Positions 14,501 through 24,029 of a stretch of 64,000 nucleotides of DNA are shown piece by piece; position 1 is the stretch's first letter; each line of letters starts with the position of its first letter. This DNA comes from Mytilus californianus (lineage: Eukaryota): contig NW_026262690.1 in NCBI RefSeq assembly GCF_021869535.1, forward strand, positions 109,244,001 through 109,308,000, in the 5' to 3' direction. The notes under the pieces were generated by a model. It had not been told where the DNA came from. It worked only from the letters and a program-made list of their open reading frames with translations, and did no database searches. A program made the translations under genes and the position numbers.

Positions 14501-15399
14501 TCCTGTCAGTGATATTTTTTTTTTCGTGTAAAAGGAATTTATACGAGAGAAAAAAAACTAATCACATGTGGATTATTATAAAAAGTCGTTTAATCTTTAC
14601 AAAAATTAACAGTTACAAAGCTTATTATGTAAACGCTGTATGAATAAACGGGAATACGGATTATGCATAACTGGGACAGCAATCCAACGACGAAAAAAAA
14701 AAATCAAAAGACATAGTGAGAGTAACACATTAAACAGAATTCATCAAAGAATTGTCATTAAAATCGAATTCTTAAAAATAACGAAAAACATCAAGTTAAG
14801 ACAATTACCGACGAGGTTCTAAGTTGACTTGGAACAGATACACGGAAATATGATTGCCACAATATTATGTTGTATATATTAAGAAACAACATAGATAGAT
14901 ATATTCTTAAATATGGTTCATCAAAAAAAATTCTGACAGATTTTGTTTTTTTTTATCCAAAAATTTGCATAAAATCCTAACAAAACATGTAGAATATGCA
15001 AAACTGTGTTCAAGTGTACTGTATAGCGATGAGTGATTCTTTTGCTTTATGAATTTATGGAAAACTTTCTGTGTATATCATTTTGCCTCTTGAGTTAAAT
15101 TTCATTAATATTGATTAACTTGCAAATGAAAAAAAAAATCCTTGGGATTTGTCCCTCGCCCTTTTCCATAGAATTGCAGTTTCAATTCACATAATTCTGT
15201 TATGTTGACGCATCATTATTGTCTTTCAATTTAACACAAAACTATCTAAACTTTGTACTATATTAGAAGTCAACACCAAAAATCTTCAATTCTGCACAAA
15301 CATATGTCATCCTATCATTGTTTTATTTTGACTTTACGTTATGTTTCTATACTGTTTCAAGTCAAGACCAAACTACTTCAAATTTACATCGTGTAGTTT

Positions 15400-16290
15400 C
15401 AAGTCAACACATTGTAAGATAAACCTCTCGTGACGTCATAATGATATAACATCGTGCTATCTTAGCTGAAAAACACGTACTTTCAACTGTACGTCGTGTA
15501 GTTTTAAATGAGCATATTATATGGCAAGCCTATCGTGATATTTTTATGATATAAGATAGTGCTATCATAGCTCAACATCACGTACTTTCAACCGTACGTC
15601 GTGTAGTTTTAAATGAGCATATCGTGGGGTAAGCCTATCGTGACATTCTAATGATATAACAACGTGCTATATTAGCTGAATAACACGTACTTTCAACTGT
15701 ACATCGTTTAGTTTTAAATGAGCATATTGTATGGCAAGCCTATCGTGATATTATTATGATATAAGATAGTGTTATCATAGCTCAACATCACGTACTTTCA
15801 ACCGTACGTCGTGTAGTTTTAAATGAGCATATCGTGCGGTAGGCCTATCGTGACATTCTAATGATATTTCAACGTGCTATCTTAGCTTAACATCACGTAC
15901 TTTCAACAGTATGTTGTGTAGTTTTAAATGAGCAAATTGTATAATAAGCCTATTGTGACATTATAATGATATAACATCGTGCTATCGTAGCTTAATATTA
16001 CAAAATTTCAACTGTACGTCGTGTAGTTTAAAGTGAGCATCTAAGCTTAACACGTTGCATCGTGTTGTTTTAAGTCAAAAAATTGTATGGTAAGGTAAGC
16101 CTTTCGTTTCAATATAGTGGTGTAGCATCGTGTTATCTTAACTTAACATCAAGTACTTCAACTGTGCATCATGGTGTTTTAAATCAACATATTGCATGAT
16201 AGGCCTATCGTATTATCACAATGATATAACATCGTACTATCTCAGCTCAACATTTATTAATAACAAGTCAGCACCATACATTTTAGCTAT
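15400..16290 (-). repeat. Inverted copy of the 105-bp tandem array in the right foldback arm
   Basis: Repeated CTTTCAAC(T/C)GTACGTCGTGTAGTTTTAAATGAGCA, the reverse complement of the left array. Confidence 0.93.
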
Positions 16291-16384: not shown

Positions 16385-16645
16385 TGTTGTGTAATATGGT
16401 ATAATGGACGTGACATTACTACGTAGCCCGGTTCCCGGTATGATCCATTGTAAACTACCCAACTCAGGGTAAGATCTCAGATAGTTACCAGGTAACGAGA
16501 GTTGGCGTATTGGCGGGAATATAGCGAGCGAGGAAACATATTACCAGAGACATATCAGAGGATATTTGGTAAGTTAGTACAATTAGAGGCGTTGAATTGT
16601 ATTAGTAGTATTAGTATTGAGTGATAATACTCGGAAATCACATCA
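16385..16645 (+). repeat. 5' LTR (261 bp)
   Basis: Matches 23740-24029 apart from about 3 substitutions and one 29-bp net indel. Confidence 0.97.
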
Positions 16646-16646
16646 C

Positions 16647-16664
16647 TGGCGCAAAAAGCATAAA
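16647..16664 (+). promoter_or_regulatory. Primer-binding site (priming tRNA not assigned)
   Basis: TGGCGCAAAAAGC starts 1 nt after the LTR-terminal CA. Confidence 0.7.
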
Positions 16665-16911
16665 AACTTGCGTTAATTACAGTGTTTACAAATTTACTTT
16701 CGATAATTGTTTTACGTTTGGCTTAAATTAGCCGTTTGTGTAGAAATCAGACAAATAAGCCGTTATCAGAGCAAATTGGAGAAAATTAGCCATTTTTCGA
16801 AAAATTAGCCGTTTTTTGTGTGGTTAGCCACATAGCACATACACATTAATTTTTTGTTCTGTTTCAGCAACCAGTGATTTAATTGAATTGTATTTGTGTT
16901 ATCATAACATA

Positions 16912-18971
16912 ATGGCAGACTTAGCTTTTCAGAAGGAGCGTACAAAGATTAATAGCTGTACTTATGAAGAATTATTATTGTTACCTGGTGTTGGAAATGC
17001 CACAGCTGACAAGATTATCTCTTTGACATATGGTAATATTCAGTTTGAGCATCTTTCTGAAATACCAAGACTACGACTTACTGAAACTTTGATGGATTTG
17101 ATAGATTTTTCACCGGTTCCACAGCGACAAGAATACAAATCACGGACACAGTCCAGTTATGATTTACAAGATTATGTTGATTATGGTGAAGTTAAAACAT
17201 CTGGATTTCATTCGGAATATGCAAAACAAGAAGCAGAATTCAATGACTTTTCAGATTCTGACACACCTTCTGATGAATGTTTGCTTAAACCTGAGCCTGA
17301 GGAAGTCAAACGTGAGTTATCACGTCCCAGTTAAGCAATGAGCAAACCTTTAGATTACACTTTGCAGTATGGGGACCACCGGTATTCATCAAAATTGTCA
17401 AGACCTGATGAAAGAAAGACGTTACTACAAATCGAGTGTGATGACGAAGATAAAGTTCAAGATTTTTCAATTGATGGACAGTTTAAGCCACACAAGATTC
17501 AAAGAACCGATGAATTAGGGTACATTAAACCACGTACCAGATTAAATGTTGAGCAAGACATTGAAGAACGTGATTATTCACGTAACCAAAATACACAACA
17601 GCAGACATCACAATTGGGATGGCAGCAAGGTCCCAATGAGCACATTGAAAAACGTGATGATTCACGTAACTAAAATACACAACAGCAGACAAAACAATTG
17701 GGATGGCAACAAGGGCTCAACGAGCACGAACCTAGATTAGAAAGGCCAGTTCCAGTCACAAGACTCCGTCAACAGGTAGAATCACATATACCTACACCAG
17801 AAATCCGACGCAGAATACCTACACCTGAAATCCGTCGCAGTATACCTTCACCAGAAATATTTAGGGAACCAGTATATTCCTTGAGGACACCAAATCCAAC
17901 AATAAACAGAAATATGTACCCTCCAAGACCATATTTAAGTTATGGGGAGTCGCCGCAATTATTGCCTCCAGCGAAACCAAAATCAAAGAACCTAGAAATA
18001 CCCAAAGGACTGAAGTATGATGGTTCCTCAAGTTGGAAAACTTTTTACACCAAGTTTCAAAGGTATGCTGATCGTTTATCGTGGACTACCACGGAACGAA
18101 AAGACCAACTGTGTTGGTGTTTACATGGGAAAGCAGGTGATTACTATGCAAATTTACTGGATAGAGACCAAGGTGTGGATTACTTTGATTTTATTCACAA
18201 ATTTGAAAAAAGGTTTAATTTTCAAGATTTAACAGAGACTTTGCAAGTTCAGTTTATGAGTGCACGACAAAATACAAATGAGAAATTGGAAGATTGGGCA
18301 GACCGAGTTCTCTCGTTAGCCTGTAAAGCCTTTAGAAATCTTCCCAAAAGTTATATGTATACACAAGCTATCTGGAAAATATGCCAGGGATGCTCAGATA
18401 AAAAAGTTGGTCAACATGGAGCCACAGCCAGACCAACATCTGTTGAAGCAGCAATTGACCAGATAAAATGGTTCCAACATAATCACGCAGCAATATTTGG
18501 TAAACCAACCGGTAGACGCAACGCAACACCAAATCAGGATGAACCAAGTTATGATTATGATAGCGACCTAGCTGTTCACGCCATTGGTAAGACAAATACA
18601 AAGTCTGAACTGTCTAAACAAATGGAAACACTGCTAGAAAAGATGACTGCTATGGAAGCATTTCATAAGCAGGAAATTGGAGACCTTAAACAGCAACTTC
18701 AAAAACAACAGTTTCCTACACAAAATGAAGTCCAGCCAGCAGTCCAACCAATTAGCCAGCAACATCAAGGTAATCGCCAACAATGACGTAACAGGGACAA
18801 TAAGCAAGATAACCGGCGACAATCACCATTTAAAGGCGCTGGGGACCTATTCCACCTGAAAAATTAGCAAATATGGCTTGCTATTTCTGTCATCAGTTTG
18901 GACACTTGCAACGGGATTGTCCTGAATTACATTCAACGACAGGAAATAATTATACAGACCATTTAAACTAG
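16912..18971 (+). pseudogene. gag: gag: N-terminal HhH motif, capsid-like region, CCHC zinc knuckle; 3 in-frame stops and 1 frameshift
   Basis: ORFs 16888-17334, 17338-17673 and 17698-18786 are in one frame, separated by single stops. Capsid-like KYDGSSSWKTFYTKF. Knuckle CYFCHQFGHLQRDC at ~18879-18920 after a frameshift. Ends CAT TTA AAC TAG. Confidence 0.9.
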
Positions 18972-19023
18972 AAGGAGTCGGGCTAAAGGGCGGAACCCTG
19001 ACTCAGACCACACCTAACCGCCT
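18962..19023 (+). promoter_or_regulatory. -1 programmed ribosomal frameshift signal (slippery UUUAAAC plus predicted H-type pseudoknot)
   Basis: T TTA AAC in the gag frame; 6-nt spacer; stem 1 GAGTCGGG(18975-82)/CCTGACTC(18997-19004); stem 2 GGGCGG(18988-93)/CCGCCT(19018-23). The -1 frame equals the pol frame (19232-18962 = 270 nt). Confidence 0.8.
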
Positions 19024-22000
19024 AACGTTGAACACGATTTCAAACGAAAGAAACAATACACCTGTTTTGTGGATTACCCCGTTGAAAACATGTGACATGT
19101 CAACATCTACAGATACTTTGTCTAATTCATCAGTACACACAACTGATAATAATTTACAGACAGTAATTGACGTTTAGTTGCAAGATCCCGTACACTTAGG
19201 AGGAACGATTTGCCAGTAAGGCTCAGCATCTATGCTTAGATTCACTTTAAAAGTACAAGGGCAGTCTGTAATTTCGGTAGTAGATACCGCAGCAGAAGTA
19301 ACGATAATTTCTGACAAAGTTTATGAATCGCTTAGCAAAAAACCACTCATGAAAAGAAAAACAACAATGCATGCAGCAGGACGTGGTATGCACATGGATG
19401 CTTTTGTAGTGGGACCAGAAGATTTACAAATTAGCGAAAGAACATATAGGACAGATATTTATGTTGCGCCTATTGATAATGACATGCTATTAGGACTTGA
19501 TTTTCTAGTCAAGGCAAAAGTAATTTTAGACTGCAGAAAATTAATCTTTCTCATCAATGGAGAAGCACTACCTATGATTCATGGAGATGTTGGACTGGTA
19601 CCGCCTGTGAACGTTATAGCAAGAGTAGCTAAAATAACCGTTCCATATAGAACAGTCATACCTCCTAATTCAGTTGTACAATTAGAGTCAGATTTGTCAG
19701 CCGAATTAACTGATTTTATAGTTGAACCTAATAAAGAGATAGATTTGTTAATCCCACGTGGTTATTACAATGCTAGTTCTTTGCCATGTGTCAGTTTACT
19801 TAATGTAACGAACAATCTTTTATGCGAAGCAATTGAAGCTGACGTTGTTGAAATGGGGCACGCCCCGTCAGTAACCAGAGATAACAATAAACTACCGGAA
19901 CAGTTGCAGAACATATTGGATAAATCCAGTACGCTTGCTGAAGACCAAAAATCCAAAGTTGCAAATTTACTTCATGAATTTGCTGATGTTTTTGCACTAG
20001 ATGATTTTGACTTAGGAACATTCAACCACATTGAACACGAGATTGATACAGGTGATGCGCGCCCTATAAAACAACAAATAAGACGAACACCCATGTGTTT
20101 TGCACACGAAGAAGAAAACCATTTAAAGAAAATGTTAGATGCAGGTATAATAGAACCATCAATATCAGAATGGGCATCTGCCCCAGTACTTGTGCACAAG
20201 CGCGATGGCAACGTGCGCTGGTGCATTGATTACCGGAAGTTGAATTCCGTGACGAAAAAAGATGTCTATCCGCTTCCCTTGATAGACGAATGTTTGGACA
20301 CGTTGGCGGAAAACGAATGTTTTTCAAAATTGGACGCTAATAGTTCATATTATCAGATTAAAGTGAAGGACTCAGACAAGGAAAAGACTGCCTTCATCAC
20401 TAAATATGGATTATTTCACTTTGTCCGAATGAGTTTTGGCCTTTGCAATGCCCAAGGAACATATTCACGAGTAATGAATCTCGTTCTCAGAGGTTTAACA
20501 TGGAATGTTGTACTCGCCTTCCTGGACGATATTCTAGTAATGGGAAAGACATTTGAAGACCATTTACAGAATTTAAGATCAGTTTTTGAACGTTTCAGAG
20601 AGTATGGGCTCAAATTGAAACCCAGGAAATGTGATTTCTTTAAAAAGGAAATAGACTTTTTAGGCAGAACAATCAATAGAGATGGTATGGCAATTGGCAG
20701 TGAATATGTTGAAGTTGTTAAGAAATGGAAAGTACCTACGACAACAAGAGAGGTTGAACAATTTCTTGGCTTTGCTAATTATCATAGAACTTTCATCAAG
20801 AATTTTGCAGATTTATCCCACCCTTTGTATCAATTGACCGGTAAGAAACCGTACAAAAGGGGAGATCCAGCGCAGGAGGCTTTTGACAAACTTGTAGAGG
20901 CATTGACAACAACTCCGTTATTGGCATTACCCAACAATAAAGATCCGTTTATTTTGGACACAGATTCTTCCAATTTCGCAATTGGCGCAGAGTTAATACA
21001 AGTCCAAGATGGTGTAGAGTGTACCGTTGCCTTCGGAAGTTTTTCATTAAACCATGAGCAAAAACGATATTGTACGACAAGAAAAGAATTGCTTGCAGTA
21101 GTAAAATTCACCAGACATTATAGACATTACCTTTTAGGAAGAGAGTTTATAGTTCGTACAGAAAATAGCAGTTTAACATGGTTATTGCACTTTAAAGAGC
21201 CACAAGGACAACTAGCTCGATGGTTAGAGGAGCTAAGCCAGTATCACATGACAGTAAAGCACAGGCCAGGTAAAAGACACCAAAATGCGGACGCATTATC
21301 ACGTCTGCCAGATTTAGCCTGTTCACATAATAGATTATCAGCTGGAAACGTGCTAAAACACAATCTACCCTGTGGAGCATGCGACTATTGTACTCGTGCT
21401 CACCAAAGTTGGCTTGGTTTTCAAGAAAACGTAGATAACGTTATTCCGTTAGCTTCACATCAGGACTGTAAAACTTATGAGCAAACACACAATACAGGAC
21501 CATTTACAGTACTACCGAGTTCTTTGATTTCTGAGAACAATTTACTGAAACAGGACATTGCACAACATACAAATGTAATTATAAAGGACCATGCTAGACC
21601 AGATTGTTCAATATCTCATGAGGGGGACCAGAACGTGACAAGTCACGTGAATGAGAATTCAGGTACATCTCCGGTCCAGCCACAACCATTTGACAGTACC
21701 AACCGAGATACAGTAAGCCAGAACCAAAATGTTTGTCACAGCTCAGTTGAAATAGTCACTACACCACTTGGTATGTCAGTTTACGCGACATATTTGGACC
21801 TTCCAAATGTAAATGCCATTACTGAGACAGGTATAGAAGCTAGTACTTATTCACCAGAGCAATTACGTGATTATCAGTCTAAAGACCCAGACTTGGAGTT
21901 AATACTGGTATAGTTCAGGGACAAAACAGAACCATCAGAGGCTACAATATTCAGATGCAGTCCAATAGCTAAGAAATATTGGATAAACAAAGATATGTTC

Positions 22001-23371
22001 TATTTAGATGATAATGGAATATTGAGAAATTTGGACAAGAAAGACAGAACACCAAGACTTGTGGTACCAAGAGATCTTGTTGAACAAGTGATATCATTAT
22101 GTCATGATATTCCTGCTGCAGATCACCAAGGTATGAATAGGACCACATTAAGAACAAAGGCGAAATATCAATGGTATGGTATGACACAACGAATAAGAGA
22201 CTTTGTCAAAACATGCAGTACATGCAATTTACACAAGAAGCCAAACAGGAAGGCTAAATGTCCGCTTACCCAGTTTCATGCAGGTGCACCAATGAAGCGT
22301 GTCCACTTGGATTTTCTAGGACCACTGCCAGAGACGAAATTTGGGAATGCCCATGTACTAGTTATAGTTGATCAGTTTTCCAAATGGATGGAATGTATTC
22401 CGTTACCAGCACAAACTGCAGAACATACGGCAAGAGCTGCTGTGAACGAGTTTTTTTCTCGTTTTGGTTTTCTATTTCAGGTTTTTACAGACCAAGGACG
22501 CAATTTTGAAAGCAAGCTTTTGAAATCCATCTGTGAAATCTTGCAAATGCACAAAGCGAGAACTACTCCGTACAGACCATCATCAAACGGACAAGCAGAA
22601 CGTTGCAACAGAACCTTAATGAACGCCGTCCGTTGCTTCGTGTCTAAACAACAAGACAATTAGGATGAACATTTGGCACAGTTGGCAGGAGCTATTCGAT
22701 CGTCAGTTAACAGAAGTACTGGTTTTACGCCAAACATGCTGATGCTTGGGAGAGAGGTTAACCAGCCTGTTGATTTATTGTACAGCGTACCTGGTGCTAA
22801 AACAGACGAGTCACAAGATGAGTATGGGATAAGACTCCGAGATGCCATAACATCTGCATATGAAATAGCGCGCAACACGCTAAAAACTACACAGAATACC
22901 ATGAAACGTGATTATGATGTACGTATTCTGGAGAGAGAATACAAAATTGGAGACTTAGTTTATGTTTTGGACACGGCAAAAATTAAAGGTAGGGCGAAGA
23001 AATTGGACCCACCTTGGAAAGGTCCAGGACTTGTATGTGCAAAATTATCTTCGTATCTGTACAAGATAAAATTACAAAAAACTGTACTGACAATAAATCA
23101 TGACCGTTTAAAGCCATGTAAAGACAGAGAAGTACCACCCTGGTTAAAACAGTGCCAGCACCGGTTACAGGACGGTGAAGATGTAACCAAGGCAACTAAT
23201 CGAGACTTATACTGTTTGTGGAGAAAACCAGATGATGGACTGTTTATGATACAGTGTGATTTTTGTCATGAGTGGTACCATGGAGCTTGTGTAGATTTGA
23301 CACCAGAGCTGGCGGACACTATGGTAAATTTCAGATGCCTACGGTGCCAAGACTCCAGTACCGCAAGGTAA
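18962..23371 (+). pseudogene. pol: pol: aspartic protease, RT, RNase H, integrase with C-terminal PHD finger; 4 in-frame stops
   Basis: PR VVDTAAEVT; RT WCIDYRKLN, MSFGLCNA, AFLDD; RH LDTDSS, ELLAVV; IN H-H-C-C, HLDFLGP, FTDQG, NGQAERCN, WKGP; then a PHD finger. ORFs 19232-21913, 21995-22663 and 22673-23371 share one frame and are separated by TAG codons at likely Trp positions. Confidence 0.96.
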
Positions 23372-23724
23372 TTTAAAATATAAGACAGGATACTATGATG
23401 TACATATAGAGCAGATTCGTGTGTACATAGAGGATAAAGGAAATCAGTTGTAAATTTTGTTTGGAAATTACATCAACAGTGAAGATTGTTTATAATATAT
23501 ATATCAAGGAATGATATGCTAGTTATAAATTAACTCCGCAGAGCGACAACGGAGCAATTGTCGAATTTTGAAATATATATGTGTGTTGTTGAAATGTCAA
23601 CATTGGAAAATATATTTATATATATTTGGAGATTTATTTGTATCCCCGTGGTGCAACCAGACGGGGTGGACTAAAAAGTGATAGTGAGTATTCGAATACG
23701 AAGTAAACTCACTCCTTTCAAAGT

Positions 23725-23739
23725 GGGGGGGGGGGGGGG
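23725..23739 (+). promoter_or_regulatory. Polypurine tract
   Basis: G run directly 5' of the 3' LTR. Confidence 0.85.
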
Positions 23740-24029
23740 TGTGGTGTAATATGGTATAATGGACGTGACATATCTATGTAGACAGTACGGTAGTTGTATA
23801 TACCGCGTAGCCCGGTTCCCGGTATGATCCATTGTAAACTACCCAACTCAGGATAAGATCTCAGATAGTTACCAGGTAACGAGAGTTGGCGTATTGGCGG
23901 GAATATAGCGAGCGAGAAAACATATTACCAGAGACATATCAGAGGATATTTGGTAAGTTAGTACAATTAGAGGCGTTGAATTGTATTAGTAGTATTAGTA
24001 TTGAGTGATAATACTCGGAAATCACATCA
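23740..24029 (+). repeat. 3' LTR (290 bp)
   Basis: TGTGGTGTAATATGG...GGAAATCACATCA, matching the 5' LTR. Confidence 0.97.

What the first reader, a model, noticed from the sequence alone, without database searches (positions are those of the whole stretch)
23207..23350. Integrase ends in a PHD finger of the H3K4me3-reader type instead of a chromodomain
Seen: in frame after the integrase WKGP motif, YCLWRKPDDGLFMIQCDFCHEWYHGACVDL...FRCLRC is a C4HC3 PHD. The second Cys is W in this copy, probably through decay. Established: the Y, M and W residues at these positions form the methyl-lysine aromatic cage in H3K4me3-binding PHDs (ING, CXXC1/Spp1, PHF2 type), and chromoviruses use an integrase chromodomain to target heterochromatin. 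Inference: a Gypsy lineage with a captured histone reader that could steer integration by H3K4 methylation state, a parallel to chromoviruses. With the HhH-Gag, this is the most distinctive architecture in the window. I cannot confirm whether it has been described.
Basis: partly seen in the sequence, partly recalled or inferred. Interest (0 to 1): 0.78.

Follow-up and report, generated by a model that had tools for sequence, protein, structure and literature searches.

The report
Gypsy integrase carrying a PHD finger
A dead copy of a mussel jumping gene (Gypsy LTR retrotransposon) whose integrase ends in a conserved zinc finger of the type that reads the active-chromatin mark H3K4me3; the domain marks a large mollusc and sea-urchin lineage, but whether it steers insertion is untested.

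Summary
Window 23207-23350 encodes a PHD finger in frame with the integrase C-terminal domain (Pfam PF00628, 31.3 bits, cut-off 24). In this copy the second zinc ligand is Trp, and pol has in-frame stops, so the copy is dead.

The domain is not a one-off:
- All 29 other family copies compared have Cys at that position.
- At least 44 near-full matches lie in the genome, 18 of them inside open pol frames of about 1470-1498 aa.
- At least four more diverged lineages in the genome carry the PHD.
- So do 110 of the 120 best database relatives, from oysters, gastropods, lucinid clams and sea urchins.

The cage Met and Trp are invariant (110/110), and an aromatic residue precedes Cys1 in 107/110. Within-family dN/dS of the PHD is about 0.2. 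The nearest solved structures are H3K4me3 readers (Spp1/CFP1, BPTF, PHF2/8, DIDO), and an AlphaFold model superposes on them at 0.8-1.4 A.

Tethering of the intasome to H3K4me3 nucleosomes is inferred, not shown.

Retrotransposon-PHD fusions have been surveyed in print (Grau-Bove 2022; de Mendoza 2019). I found no description of this clade, so I rate it a new member of a known kind. First readers of this scan noted the same fusion on at least four other stretches of this genome.

The parts
16385..16645 (+). 5' LTR (261 bp, TG...CA)
   Evidence: Direct repeat with 23740-24029: about 5 substitutions plus one 29-bp indel.
16647..16658 (+). primer-binding-site-like TGGCGC... one base after the LTR
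   Evidence: Read from the sequence. Position and TGG start as in LTR retrotransposons. The matching tRNA was not identified.
16888..18786 (+). gag remnants (HhH motif at the N-terminus, capsid-like PNMA/Retrotrans_gag part), broken into several ORFs
   Evidence: HHH PF00633 24.8 bits for 16888-17331. Weak PNMA/Retrotrans_gag hits for 17698-18783. The uninterrupted copy L045 has a 688-aa gag with HHH_3 and a CCHC knuckle.
19232..21913 (+). protease - reverse transcriptase - RNase H part of pol, ended by an in-frame TAG at 21911
   Evidence: Pfam gag-asp_proteas, RVT_1, RT_RNaseH. Stop positions.
21995..22663 (+). integrase N-terminal H2C2 zinc domain and DDE core, ended by an in-frame TAG at 22661
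   Evidence: Pfam Integrase_H2C2 58 bits, rve 48.9 bits. Same reading frame as the parts before and after.
22673..23206 (+). integrase C-terminal part: helical linker, SH3-like (GPY/F-type) domain with WKGP, one helix and a short linker
   Evidence: Weak Pfam MLVIN_C, Integrase_p58_C and SH3_Tf2-1 hits. AlphaFold strands at residues 95-148 with pLDDT 92-96. Foldseek matches to Ty3 and PFV integrase.
23207..23350 (+). PHD finger (C4HC3; H3K4me3-reader subclass), the finding itself
23219..23221 (+). codon of the second zinc ligand, Trp in this copy
   Evidence: Cys in all 29 other copies compared.
23720..23739 (+). polypurine tract (AAAG then a G run) abutting the 3' LTR
23740..24029 (+). 3' LTR (290 bp)
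   Evidence: The flanks read GTAG (5') and GTAC (3'), a 4-bp target duplication with one mismatch.

Best explanation
The stretch is the C-terminal PHD finger of the integrase of a Ty3/Gypsy LTR retrotransposon (16385-24029) in a mussel genome.

This particular copy is dead. It has in-frame stops in pol and has lost one zinc ligand of the PHD.

Shown: in the family and in a large related clade of mollusc and echinoderm elements, the finger is a conserved, selected part of pol. It sits a short linker after the SH3-like integrase C-terminal domain, which is where chromoviruses carry a chromodomain.

Shown by homology and model: its sequence and predicted fold are those of H3K4me3/me2-reading PHD fingers of the CFP1/Spp1, PHF2/8 and BPTF kind. 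The Tyr/Met/Trp methyl-lysine cage is conserved.

Inferred: the finger docks on the H3 N-terminal tail carrying K4me3. This tethers the intasome to nucleosomes at active promoters and 5' gene ends, so new copies land in open, transcribed chromatin.
For: Element anatomy: LTRs, PBS, PPT, 4-bp target duplication, and gag then PR-RT-RNH-IN in Gypsy order.

PHD identity: Pfam 31.3 bits here and 41.9 bits in a copy with all ligands.

Conservation within the genome:
- At least 44 matches of 89% identity or more over the whole 232-aa query; 18 lie in open frames of about 1470-1498 aa.
- Cys at ligand 2 in 29 of 29 other copies.
- Within-family dN/dS is about 0.19-0.20 for the PHD and about 0.07 for the integrase C-part.
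- Four further lineages at 42-58% identity keep the finger.

Conservation elsewhere:
- 110 of the 120 best relatives have a complete C4HC3 finger. It usually ends a median of 5 residues before the end of pol.
- Met is 110/110, Trp 110/110, Tyr or Phe before Cys1 107/110, and the C-x-C spacing is 110/110.
- Named sources are Pinctada, Ostrea, Nucella, Diadema and Lytechinus.

Phylogeny: on a pol tree with the PHD columns left out, all PHD-bearing rows form one clade (support 100). Two PHD-less elements of the same genome fall outside it.

Reader type:
- phmmer against the PDB gives Spp1 7.5e-14, BPTF 6e-13, PHF2 7e-13, CFP1 7e-13, then PPS, PHF8, DIDO, KDM7, TAF3 and ING.
- The AlphaFold2 model has pLDDT 90-97 over the finger.
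- Foldseek superposes it on H3K4me3-bound BPTF, PPS, DIDO, PHF2 and PHF8 at 0.8-1.4 A with 40-45% identity.

Plausibility of tethering:
- Chromodomains do this for chromoviruses (Gao 2008, cited in PMC6673714).
- An ING2 PHD tethered to HIV integrase through the LEDGF IBD redirected integration to transcription start sites (review PMC8149907).

Expression: a few sense-oriented RNA reads and an RNA-library contig cover the family.
Against: - No binding or integration-site data exist.
- The complex prediction with the mussel's own H3 tail gave no verdict.
- The 0.8-kb 3' flanks of 22 copies have GC and CpG o/e like the rest of the window. The test is weak and lacks a proper background.
- The first cage residue is His rather than Tyr in about half of the family copies.
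- The residue matching BPTF Tyr17 / PHF2 Tyr14 is absent, so the cage has three walls, as in CFP1 and Spp1.
- The window copy sits next to a 105-bp satellite, not an obvious promoter.
- The tree's ingroup was collected with a query that included the PHD. Nested PHD-less lineages could therefore have been missed.
Confidence: 0.6

Rival explanations
1. The finger does read the H3 tail, but it does not choose the insertion site. It might instead hold Pol or integrase on active chromatin for nuclear retention. It might recruit or mimic COMPASS/NURF-type factors to keep new copies expressed, or shield them from silencing.
For: The same conservation and reader-type evidence applies. The flanks of existing copies show no promoter-like composition. 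Grau-Bove et al. suggest that TE-borne reader domains may help evade host suppression.
Against: The finger is fused to the integrase C-terminal domain. That domain contacts target nucleosomes in solved intasomes (PFV and Ty3 matches). The position is the one where chromodomains act in targeting. Old fixed copies are filtered by selection, so their flanks say little.
Confidence: 0.15
2. The finger binds something other than methylated H3K4: unmodified or differently modified H3, a non-histone N-terminal peptide, or nucleic acid.
For: PHF2's PHD also binds a VRK1 N-terminal peptide (PDB 7m10 and 8f8y among the matches). The piggyBac cross-brace zinc finger binds DNA (title of PMC5861402, listed). 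His replaces the first cage Tyr in many family copies. The complex prediction gave no verdict.
Against: The cage Trp and Met are invariant in 110 of 110 relatives, with an aromatic before Cys1 in 107 of 110. All of the best solved matches are H3K4me2/3 readers, and many were solved with that peptide. By established knowledge, readers of unmodified H3K4 (BHC80/AIRE type) lack this Trp.
Confidence: 0.15
3. The PHD-like motif is a chance cysteine pattern, a host exon read through by accident, or a capture confined to this copy.
For: One ligand is missing in the window copy.
Against: The Pfam score is above the gathering threshold. The finger lies in the same frame in 29 other copies, and the frame stays open through the pol C-terminus in 18 copies. 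It is present in 110 of the 120 best relatives from several phyla. dN/dS is about 0.2.
Confidence: 0.01

Closest known systems
Chromoviruses (Ty3/Gypsy elements with an integrase C-terminal chromodomain, e.g. MAGGY, Tf1; Gao et al. 2008)
   Same: Gypsy gene order. A small methyl-lysine reader is fused after the SH3-like/GPY-F integrase C-terminal domain. The presumed role is tethering the intasome to marked nucleosomes.
   Different: The fold is a zinc-binding PHD, not a chromodomain; no chromo hit was found. The predicted mark is H3K4me3 (active promoters), not H3K9me (heterochromatin). Function is shown for chromodomains and not for this finger.
Host H3K4me3-reader PHD fingers: Spp1/CFP1 (COMPASS/SET1), PHF2/PHF8/KDM7, BPTF, PPS, DIDO1
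   Same: 35-45% identity over about 50 residues. C-x-C start, the F-M-I-x-C and C-x-E-W-[YF]-H motifs, and the cage Tyr/Met/Trp. The 11-residue Cys2-Cys3 loop matches CFP1/Spp1. The model superposes at 0.8-1.4 A.
   Different: It is part of a retrotransposon Pol, not a chromatin enzyme or remodeller. No close host donor was identified. Binding is untested.
Retrotransposon-PHD fusions surveyed by Grau-Bove et al. 2022 (bioRxiv 10.1101/2021.11.30.470311), including PYGO-like PHDs in cnidarian retrotransposons
   Same: A PHD reader encoded with reverse transcriptase and integrase domains. An H3K4me-reading subtype, with the same proposed logic of chromatin tethering or evasion.
   Different: The PHD subtype differs: CFP1/Spp1/PHF2-like, not PYGO-like. 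The hosts differ (molluscs and echinoderms). The position is fixed at the integrase C-terminus of one Gypsy clade. The paper's text does not name this clade.
Ginger1-9_HM DNA transposon of Hydra (Bao, Kapitonov and Jurka 2010, PMC2836005)
   Same: A Gypsy-type integrase (H2C2, DDE, GPY/F) with a PHD among its C-terminal extra domains.
   Different: It is a cut-and-paste DNA transposon without reverse transcriptase or LTRs. The PHD accompanies a Ulp1 protease. It is a single family.
PHD fingers of non-LTR elements (CR1 and Jockey ORF1; Kapitonov and Jurka 2003; Metcalfe and Casane 2014) and of Chlamydomonas REM1 and Chlamys elements
   Same: A TE-borne PHD accessory domain.
   Different: A different element class and a different host protein (ORF1, reverse transcriptase/endonuclease, or a separate ORF), not the integrase.
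Engineered LEDGF-IBD fusions to the ING2 PHD finger (Ferris et al. 2010, reviewed in PMC8149907)
   Same: An H3K4me3-reading PHD tethered to a retroviral integrase shifts integration to transcription start sites and active genes. This is a working model of the mechanism proposed here.
   Different: Artificial, in trans through a host cofactor, and in human cells with HIV-1.

Membership tests
PHD finger (Pfam PF00628) | Score above Pfam's gathering threshold | tested here: met
   31.3 bits against 24 for the window copy. 41.9 bits for a copy with all ligands.
PHD finger (Pfam PF00628) | Eight zinc ligands in the C4HC3 pattern | tested here: not met
   The window copy has seven of eight, with Trp at ligand 2. 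The family meets the feature: 29 of 29 other copies and 110 of the 120 best relatives have all eight. The window copy is therefore a decayed member.
PHD finger (Pfam PF00628) | Cross-brace PHD fold | tested here: met
   AlphaFold2 model of a family copy with all ligands, pLDDT 90-97 over the finger. Foldseek gives 0.8-1.4 A rmsd to solved PHDs. This is a prediction, not a solved structure.
H3K4me3-reading PHD subclass | Cage Trp three residues after Cys4 | tested here: met
   Trp in the window copy and in 110 of 110 relatives.
H3K4me3-reading PHD subclass | Further cage walls: an aromatic residue before Cys1 and Met three residues before Cys3 | tested here: met
   Tyr and Met in the window copy. 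Met in 110 of 110 and Tyr or Phe in 107 of 110 relatives. Within the family the first position is Tyr or His. They align with BPTF Tyr10/Tyr23 and PHF2 Tyr7/Met20 (residue numbers are from my own knowledge).
H3K4me3-reading PHD subclass | Selective binding of the H3 tail trimethylated at K4 | not testable with these tools
   No methylated ligand can be modelled. The complex prediction with H3 residues 2-36 gave no verdict.
Ty3/Gypsy LTR retrotransposon | LTRs, PBS, PPT and pol order PR-RT-RNH-IN | tested here: met
Chromovirus | Chromodomain at the integrase C-terminus | tested here: not met
   No chromo-domain hit at E 0.1 or below in the integrase C-part. A PHD stands there instead.
Chromovirus | Placement in the chromovirus clade on an RT tree with reference elements | not tested

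The most novel reading that the evidence does not exclude
A whole clade of mollusc and echinoderm Gypsy elements uses a built-in CFP1/Spp1-like PHD finger on its integrase to insert at H3K4me3-marked nucleosomes. That would be the first natural LTR-retrotransposon lineage shown to read an active-chromatin histone mark directly. It would be the euchromatic mirror image of chromoviruses, and a likely shaper of promoter-proximal variation in these genomes.
Probability: 0.4. Interest if true: 0.7.

Novelty: new member of a known kind. Interest (0 to 1): 0.45.

Why it matters
How retroelements choose insertion sites decides how much harm they do and how they rewire gene regulation. Chromoviruses show that a reader domain on the integrase can send insertions to heterochromatin. 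A large, young and apparently transcribed clade whose integrase carries an H3K4me3-type reader predicts the opposite strategy, insertion at active promoters. The animals concerned (mussels, oysters, sea urchins) have abundant resequencing data, so the prediction can be tested with polymorphic insertions and H3K4me3 maps. The finger is also a compact natural module of possible use for directing integrases. The concept has been surveyed in print, so the value lies in a well-defined, testable clade rather than in a new principle.

Tried and rejected
- Complex prediction of the finger (70 aa, from a copy with all ligands) with the genome's own histone H3 residues 2-36 scored 0.31 against a mark of 0.34. 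That is no verdict and is not used as evidence either way.
- Flank composition was uninformative. For 22 copies with about 0.85 kb of 3' flank, median GC was 0.32 and CpG o/e 0.87. Window tiles gave 0.33 and 0.80. The background is not random and old copies are filtered by selection.
The single-origin inference therefore rests on two outgroups.
- The first tree attempt timed out in MAFFT. I repeated it on trimmed sequences.
Pfam did not detect it in the part of L035 that I hold.
- Eight counted literature searches found no paper on a Gypsy integrase-PHD clade in molluscs or echinoderms. One further query was rejected for its syntax. Subscription journals and Repbase Reports are not covered.
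- I did not run the large representative-protein search. It carries no names or taxa and the operators flagged its cost.
- I rejected chance, a host exon and a one-copy capture.

Full report
**What is at the coordinates.** Window 23207-23350 lies in the ORF 22673-23371. That ORF carries the end of an integrase, including the WKGP motif, and then reads L-Y-C-L-W-R-K-P ... C-D-F-C-H-E-W-Y-H-G-A-C ... F-R-C-L-R-C-Q. Pfam calls a PHD finger at residues 185-225 of the ORF with 31.3 bits (E 2.1e-07), above the 24-bit gathering score. Seven of the eight C4HC3 ligands are present. The second ligand, in the C-x-C start typical of this PHD subclass, is Trp (codon 23219-23221).

**The element around it.** The finger belongs to a Ty3/Gypsy LTR retrotransposon spanning 16385-24029.
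- The 5' LTR is 16385-16645 and the 3' LTR is 23740-24029. They differ by about five substitutions and one 29-bp indel.
- A TGGCGC primer-binding-like site lies one base after the 5' LTR, and an A/G-run polypurine tract abuts the 3' LTR.
- The flanks read GTAG and GTAC, a 4-bp target duplication with one mismatch.
- Gene order is gag (HhH motif, capsid-like part), then protease, reverse transcriptase, RNase H, integrase H2C2, DDE core, an SH3-like C-terminal domain, and the PHD.

This copy is dead. Pol stays in one frame but has in-frame stops at 21911 and 22661. There are several more stops between 18857 and 19217, and gag is fragmented. Against an uninterrupted copy it is 94% identical, and within pol it differs only by in-frame indels.

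**Not a one-off: the family.** The genome (1.65 Gb) was called a Mytilus mussel by earlier agents of this scan. That fits the molluscan relatives found here. It holds at least 44 matches of 89% identity or more over the whole 232-aa query. Eighteen of them lie inside open frames of about 1470-1498 aa. All 29 other copies that I read have Cys at the second ligand and a complete finger, so the Trp is private to the window copy. Pooled pairwise dN/dS among 28-29 copies is 0.19-0.20 for the finger and 0.06-0.07 for the rest of the integrase C-part. This is purifying selection, somewhat weaker on the finger. One caveat is that the copies were chosen by protein similarity, which biases dN downward. 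The first cage residue is Tyr in some copies and His in others, and both forms occur in copies with open pol frames.

**Not a one-off: the clade.** Four further lineages of the same genome keep a finger with the same signature. Their integrase C-parts are 58%, 54%, 47% and 42% identical to the query. One has a long linker, and in one the ORF continues past the finger.

A word-indexed search of public proteins with the integrase C-part plus finger of an uninterrupted copy returned 277 hits. Of the 120 best, 110 have a complete C4HC3 finger, and in most it ends a median of 5 residues before the end of pol. The hits that carry a source name come from several groups:
- pearl and flat oysters (Pinctada, Ostrea);
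- a gastropod (Nucella);
- sea urchins (Diadema, Lytechinus);
- metagenome bins of lucinid-clam symbionts, where they are presumably host contamination.

Across the 110 fingers the conservation is as follows:
- the C-x-C spacing is invariant;
- the Cys2-Cys3 loop is 11 residues in 106;
- Met three residues before Cys3 is 110/110;
- Trp three residues after Cys4 is 110/110;
- the residue before Cys1 is Tyr or Phe in 107.

On a pol tree built without the finger's columns, all PHD-bearing rows form one clade with support 100. Two PHD-less Gypsy elements of this genome fall outside it. The few PHD-less tips inside the clade are truncated or decayed models. This fits a single old acquisition with scattered losses. 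However, the ingroup was collected with a query that contained the finger, and I could not add outgroups. A single origin is therefore not ruled out rather than shown. Sea-urchin rows nest among mollusc rows.

**What kind of PHD.** Against all PDB sequences, the finger of a copy with all ligands matches Spp1 (7.5e-14), BPTF, PHF2 and CFP1 (each about 6-7e-13). After these come PPS, PHF8, DIDO1, KDM7, the plant ALFIN/EBS/SHL proteins, TAF3, PHF13 and the ING proteins. Nearly all of these are solved as H3K4me3/me2 readers. The 11-residue loop matches CFP1/Spp1 rather than PHF2 or BPTF.

An AlphaFold2 model of the last 232 residues (56-row alignment, mean pLDDT 82.7) gives three confident parts:
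- an SH3-like domain (pLDDT 92-96);
- one helix followed by a short linker (pLDDT about 78);
- the finger (pLDDT 90-97).

Foldseek superposes the finger on H3K4me3-bound BPTF, PPS, DIDO, PHF2 and PHF8 at 0.8-1.4 A over 51-57 residues with 40-45% identity. The upstream part matches Ty3 and foamy-virus integrase in their intasomes. In the alignments, the finger's Tyr, Met and Trp fall on BPTF Tyr10, Tyr23 and Trp32 and on PHF2 Tyr7, Met20 and Trp29 (the residue numbers are from my own knowledge). The fourth wall (BPTF Tyr17) has no counterpart, as in CFP1/Spp1.

**Mechanism: what is shown and what is inferred.** It is shown that a selected, lineage-wide PHD of the H3K4me3-reader type is fused to the integrase C-terminal domain. 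It is inferred that the finger binds the H3 tail with K4me3 and tethers the intasome to promoter-proximal nucleosomes.

The inference rests on three things. The first is the conserved cage. The second is the position, which is where chromoviruses carry the chromodomain that directs them to H3K9me chromatin (Gao 2008, as cited in PMC6673714). The third is an engineered precedent: an ING2 PHD tethered to HIV integrase through the LEDGF IBD moved integration toward transcription start sites (review PMC8149907).

I put the domain identity at 0.97 or higher, H3K4me2/3 binding at about 0.65, and a real effect on site choice at about 0.4-0.45.

Direct tests available here were weak:
- The complex prediction with the mussel's own H3 tail gave no verdict.
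- The 3' flanks of 22 copies show only a loose N-T-A-N target and background-like GC and CpG content.

RNA runs of two species labels hold a few reads at 90% identity or more. In one run every read has its first mate on the minus strand, as expected for sense transcripts in a stranded library whose first mate reads the strand opposite the RNA; I did not verify that the library is of that kind. An RNA-library contig spans 22226-23262. This is weak evidence that family members are transcribed, and DNA carry-over is not excluded.

**Comparison with the literature.**
- de Mendoza et al. [quoted passage not shown]
- Grau-Bove et al. 2022 found that PHD and Chromo domains often co-occur with reverse transcriptase and integrase domains across 172 eukaryotes. 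They describe PYGO-like, H3K4me-reading PHDs in cnidarian retrotransposons. Their text names neither molluscs nor this subtype.
- Ginger1-9_HM of Hydra joins a Gypsy-type integrase to Ulp1 and a PHD.
- CR1 and Jockey ORF1, Chlamys and REM1 carry PHDs elsewhere in the element.
- Eight counted full-text searches found no description of a Gypsy integrase-PHD clade in molluscs or echinoderms, and no functional test of any TE-borne PHD in targeting.

I therefore file this as a new, well-delimited member of a known kind. It is not a chromovirus, because the chromodomain was tested and is not present. It plausibly works like one, with the opposite chromatin preference.

**Scan context and constraints.** First readers of this scan noted the same integrase-PHD fusion on at least four other stretches of this genome, none yet followed up.

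Noticed in passing
window 16888-17331; L045:5952-8015 (- strand): The Gag N-terminus carries a helix-hairpin-helix motif. HHH scores 24.8 bits against a 24-bit cut-off in the window copy. HHH_3 scores 29.3 against 27 in an uninterrupted 688-aa gag that also has a CCHC knuckle. This is an unusual DNA-binding-type motif for a Gag protein.
   Followed up: partly
window 15272-16250: An array of a 105-bp tandem repeat (at least 7 units, 64-90% alike) ends about 130 bp upstream of the element's 5' LTR.
   Followed up: no
window 17558-17725: An 84-bp tandem duplication (89% identical) lies inside the gag region of this copy.
   Followed up: no
L031:6435-7700, L033:6776-7699, L034:8696-10000, L041:6605-7600: Related PHD-bearing lineages have a further open frame of 300-435 aa or more downstream of pol. 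Three of the four were scanned (L034 was not) and gave no Pfam match. The window's family has only about 370 bp between the pol stop and the 3' LTR, and no such frame.
   Followed up: partly
L035:6099-7799: In one lineage the pol frame runs on for more than 500 residues beyond the PHD, with a D-S-H-M-H-L-D motif. Pfam gave only the PHD in the part I hold.
   Followed up: partly
L002-L030, codon before Cys1 of the PHD: The first cage position is Tyr in some family copies and His in others, and both forms occur in copies with open pol frames. Across other species His is rare (2 of 110).
   Followed up: partly
proteins P0031, P0038, P0048: Full Gypsy Pol proteins with the PHD are deposited as proteins of bacterial metagenome bins (Candidatus Thiodiazotropha from lucinid clams, Sedimenticola). 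This is most likely host-mollusc contamination of those bins.
   Followed up: no
tree (P0082, P0106, P0110): Sea-urchin elements nest inside clades otherwise made of mollusc and unnamed marine sequences. This means either an old bilaterian clade or horizontal transfer between marine invertebrates.
   Followed up: no
3' flanks of L002-L030: The first four bases after the 3' LTR follow a loose N-T-A-N pattern (T at position 2 and A at position 3 in 18 of 22 copies each). This matches the GTAG/GTAC flanks of the window copy.
   Followed up: partly
L034:770-8692: One copy of a related lineage has an uninterrupted frame of 2641 aa ending in the PHD, far longer than the 1817 aa of its sister copy L033.
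   Followed up: no
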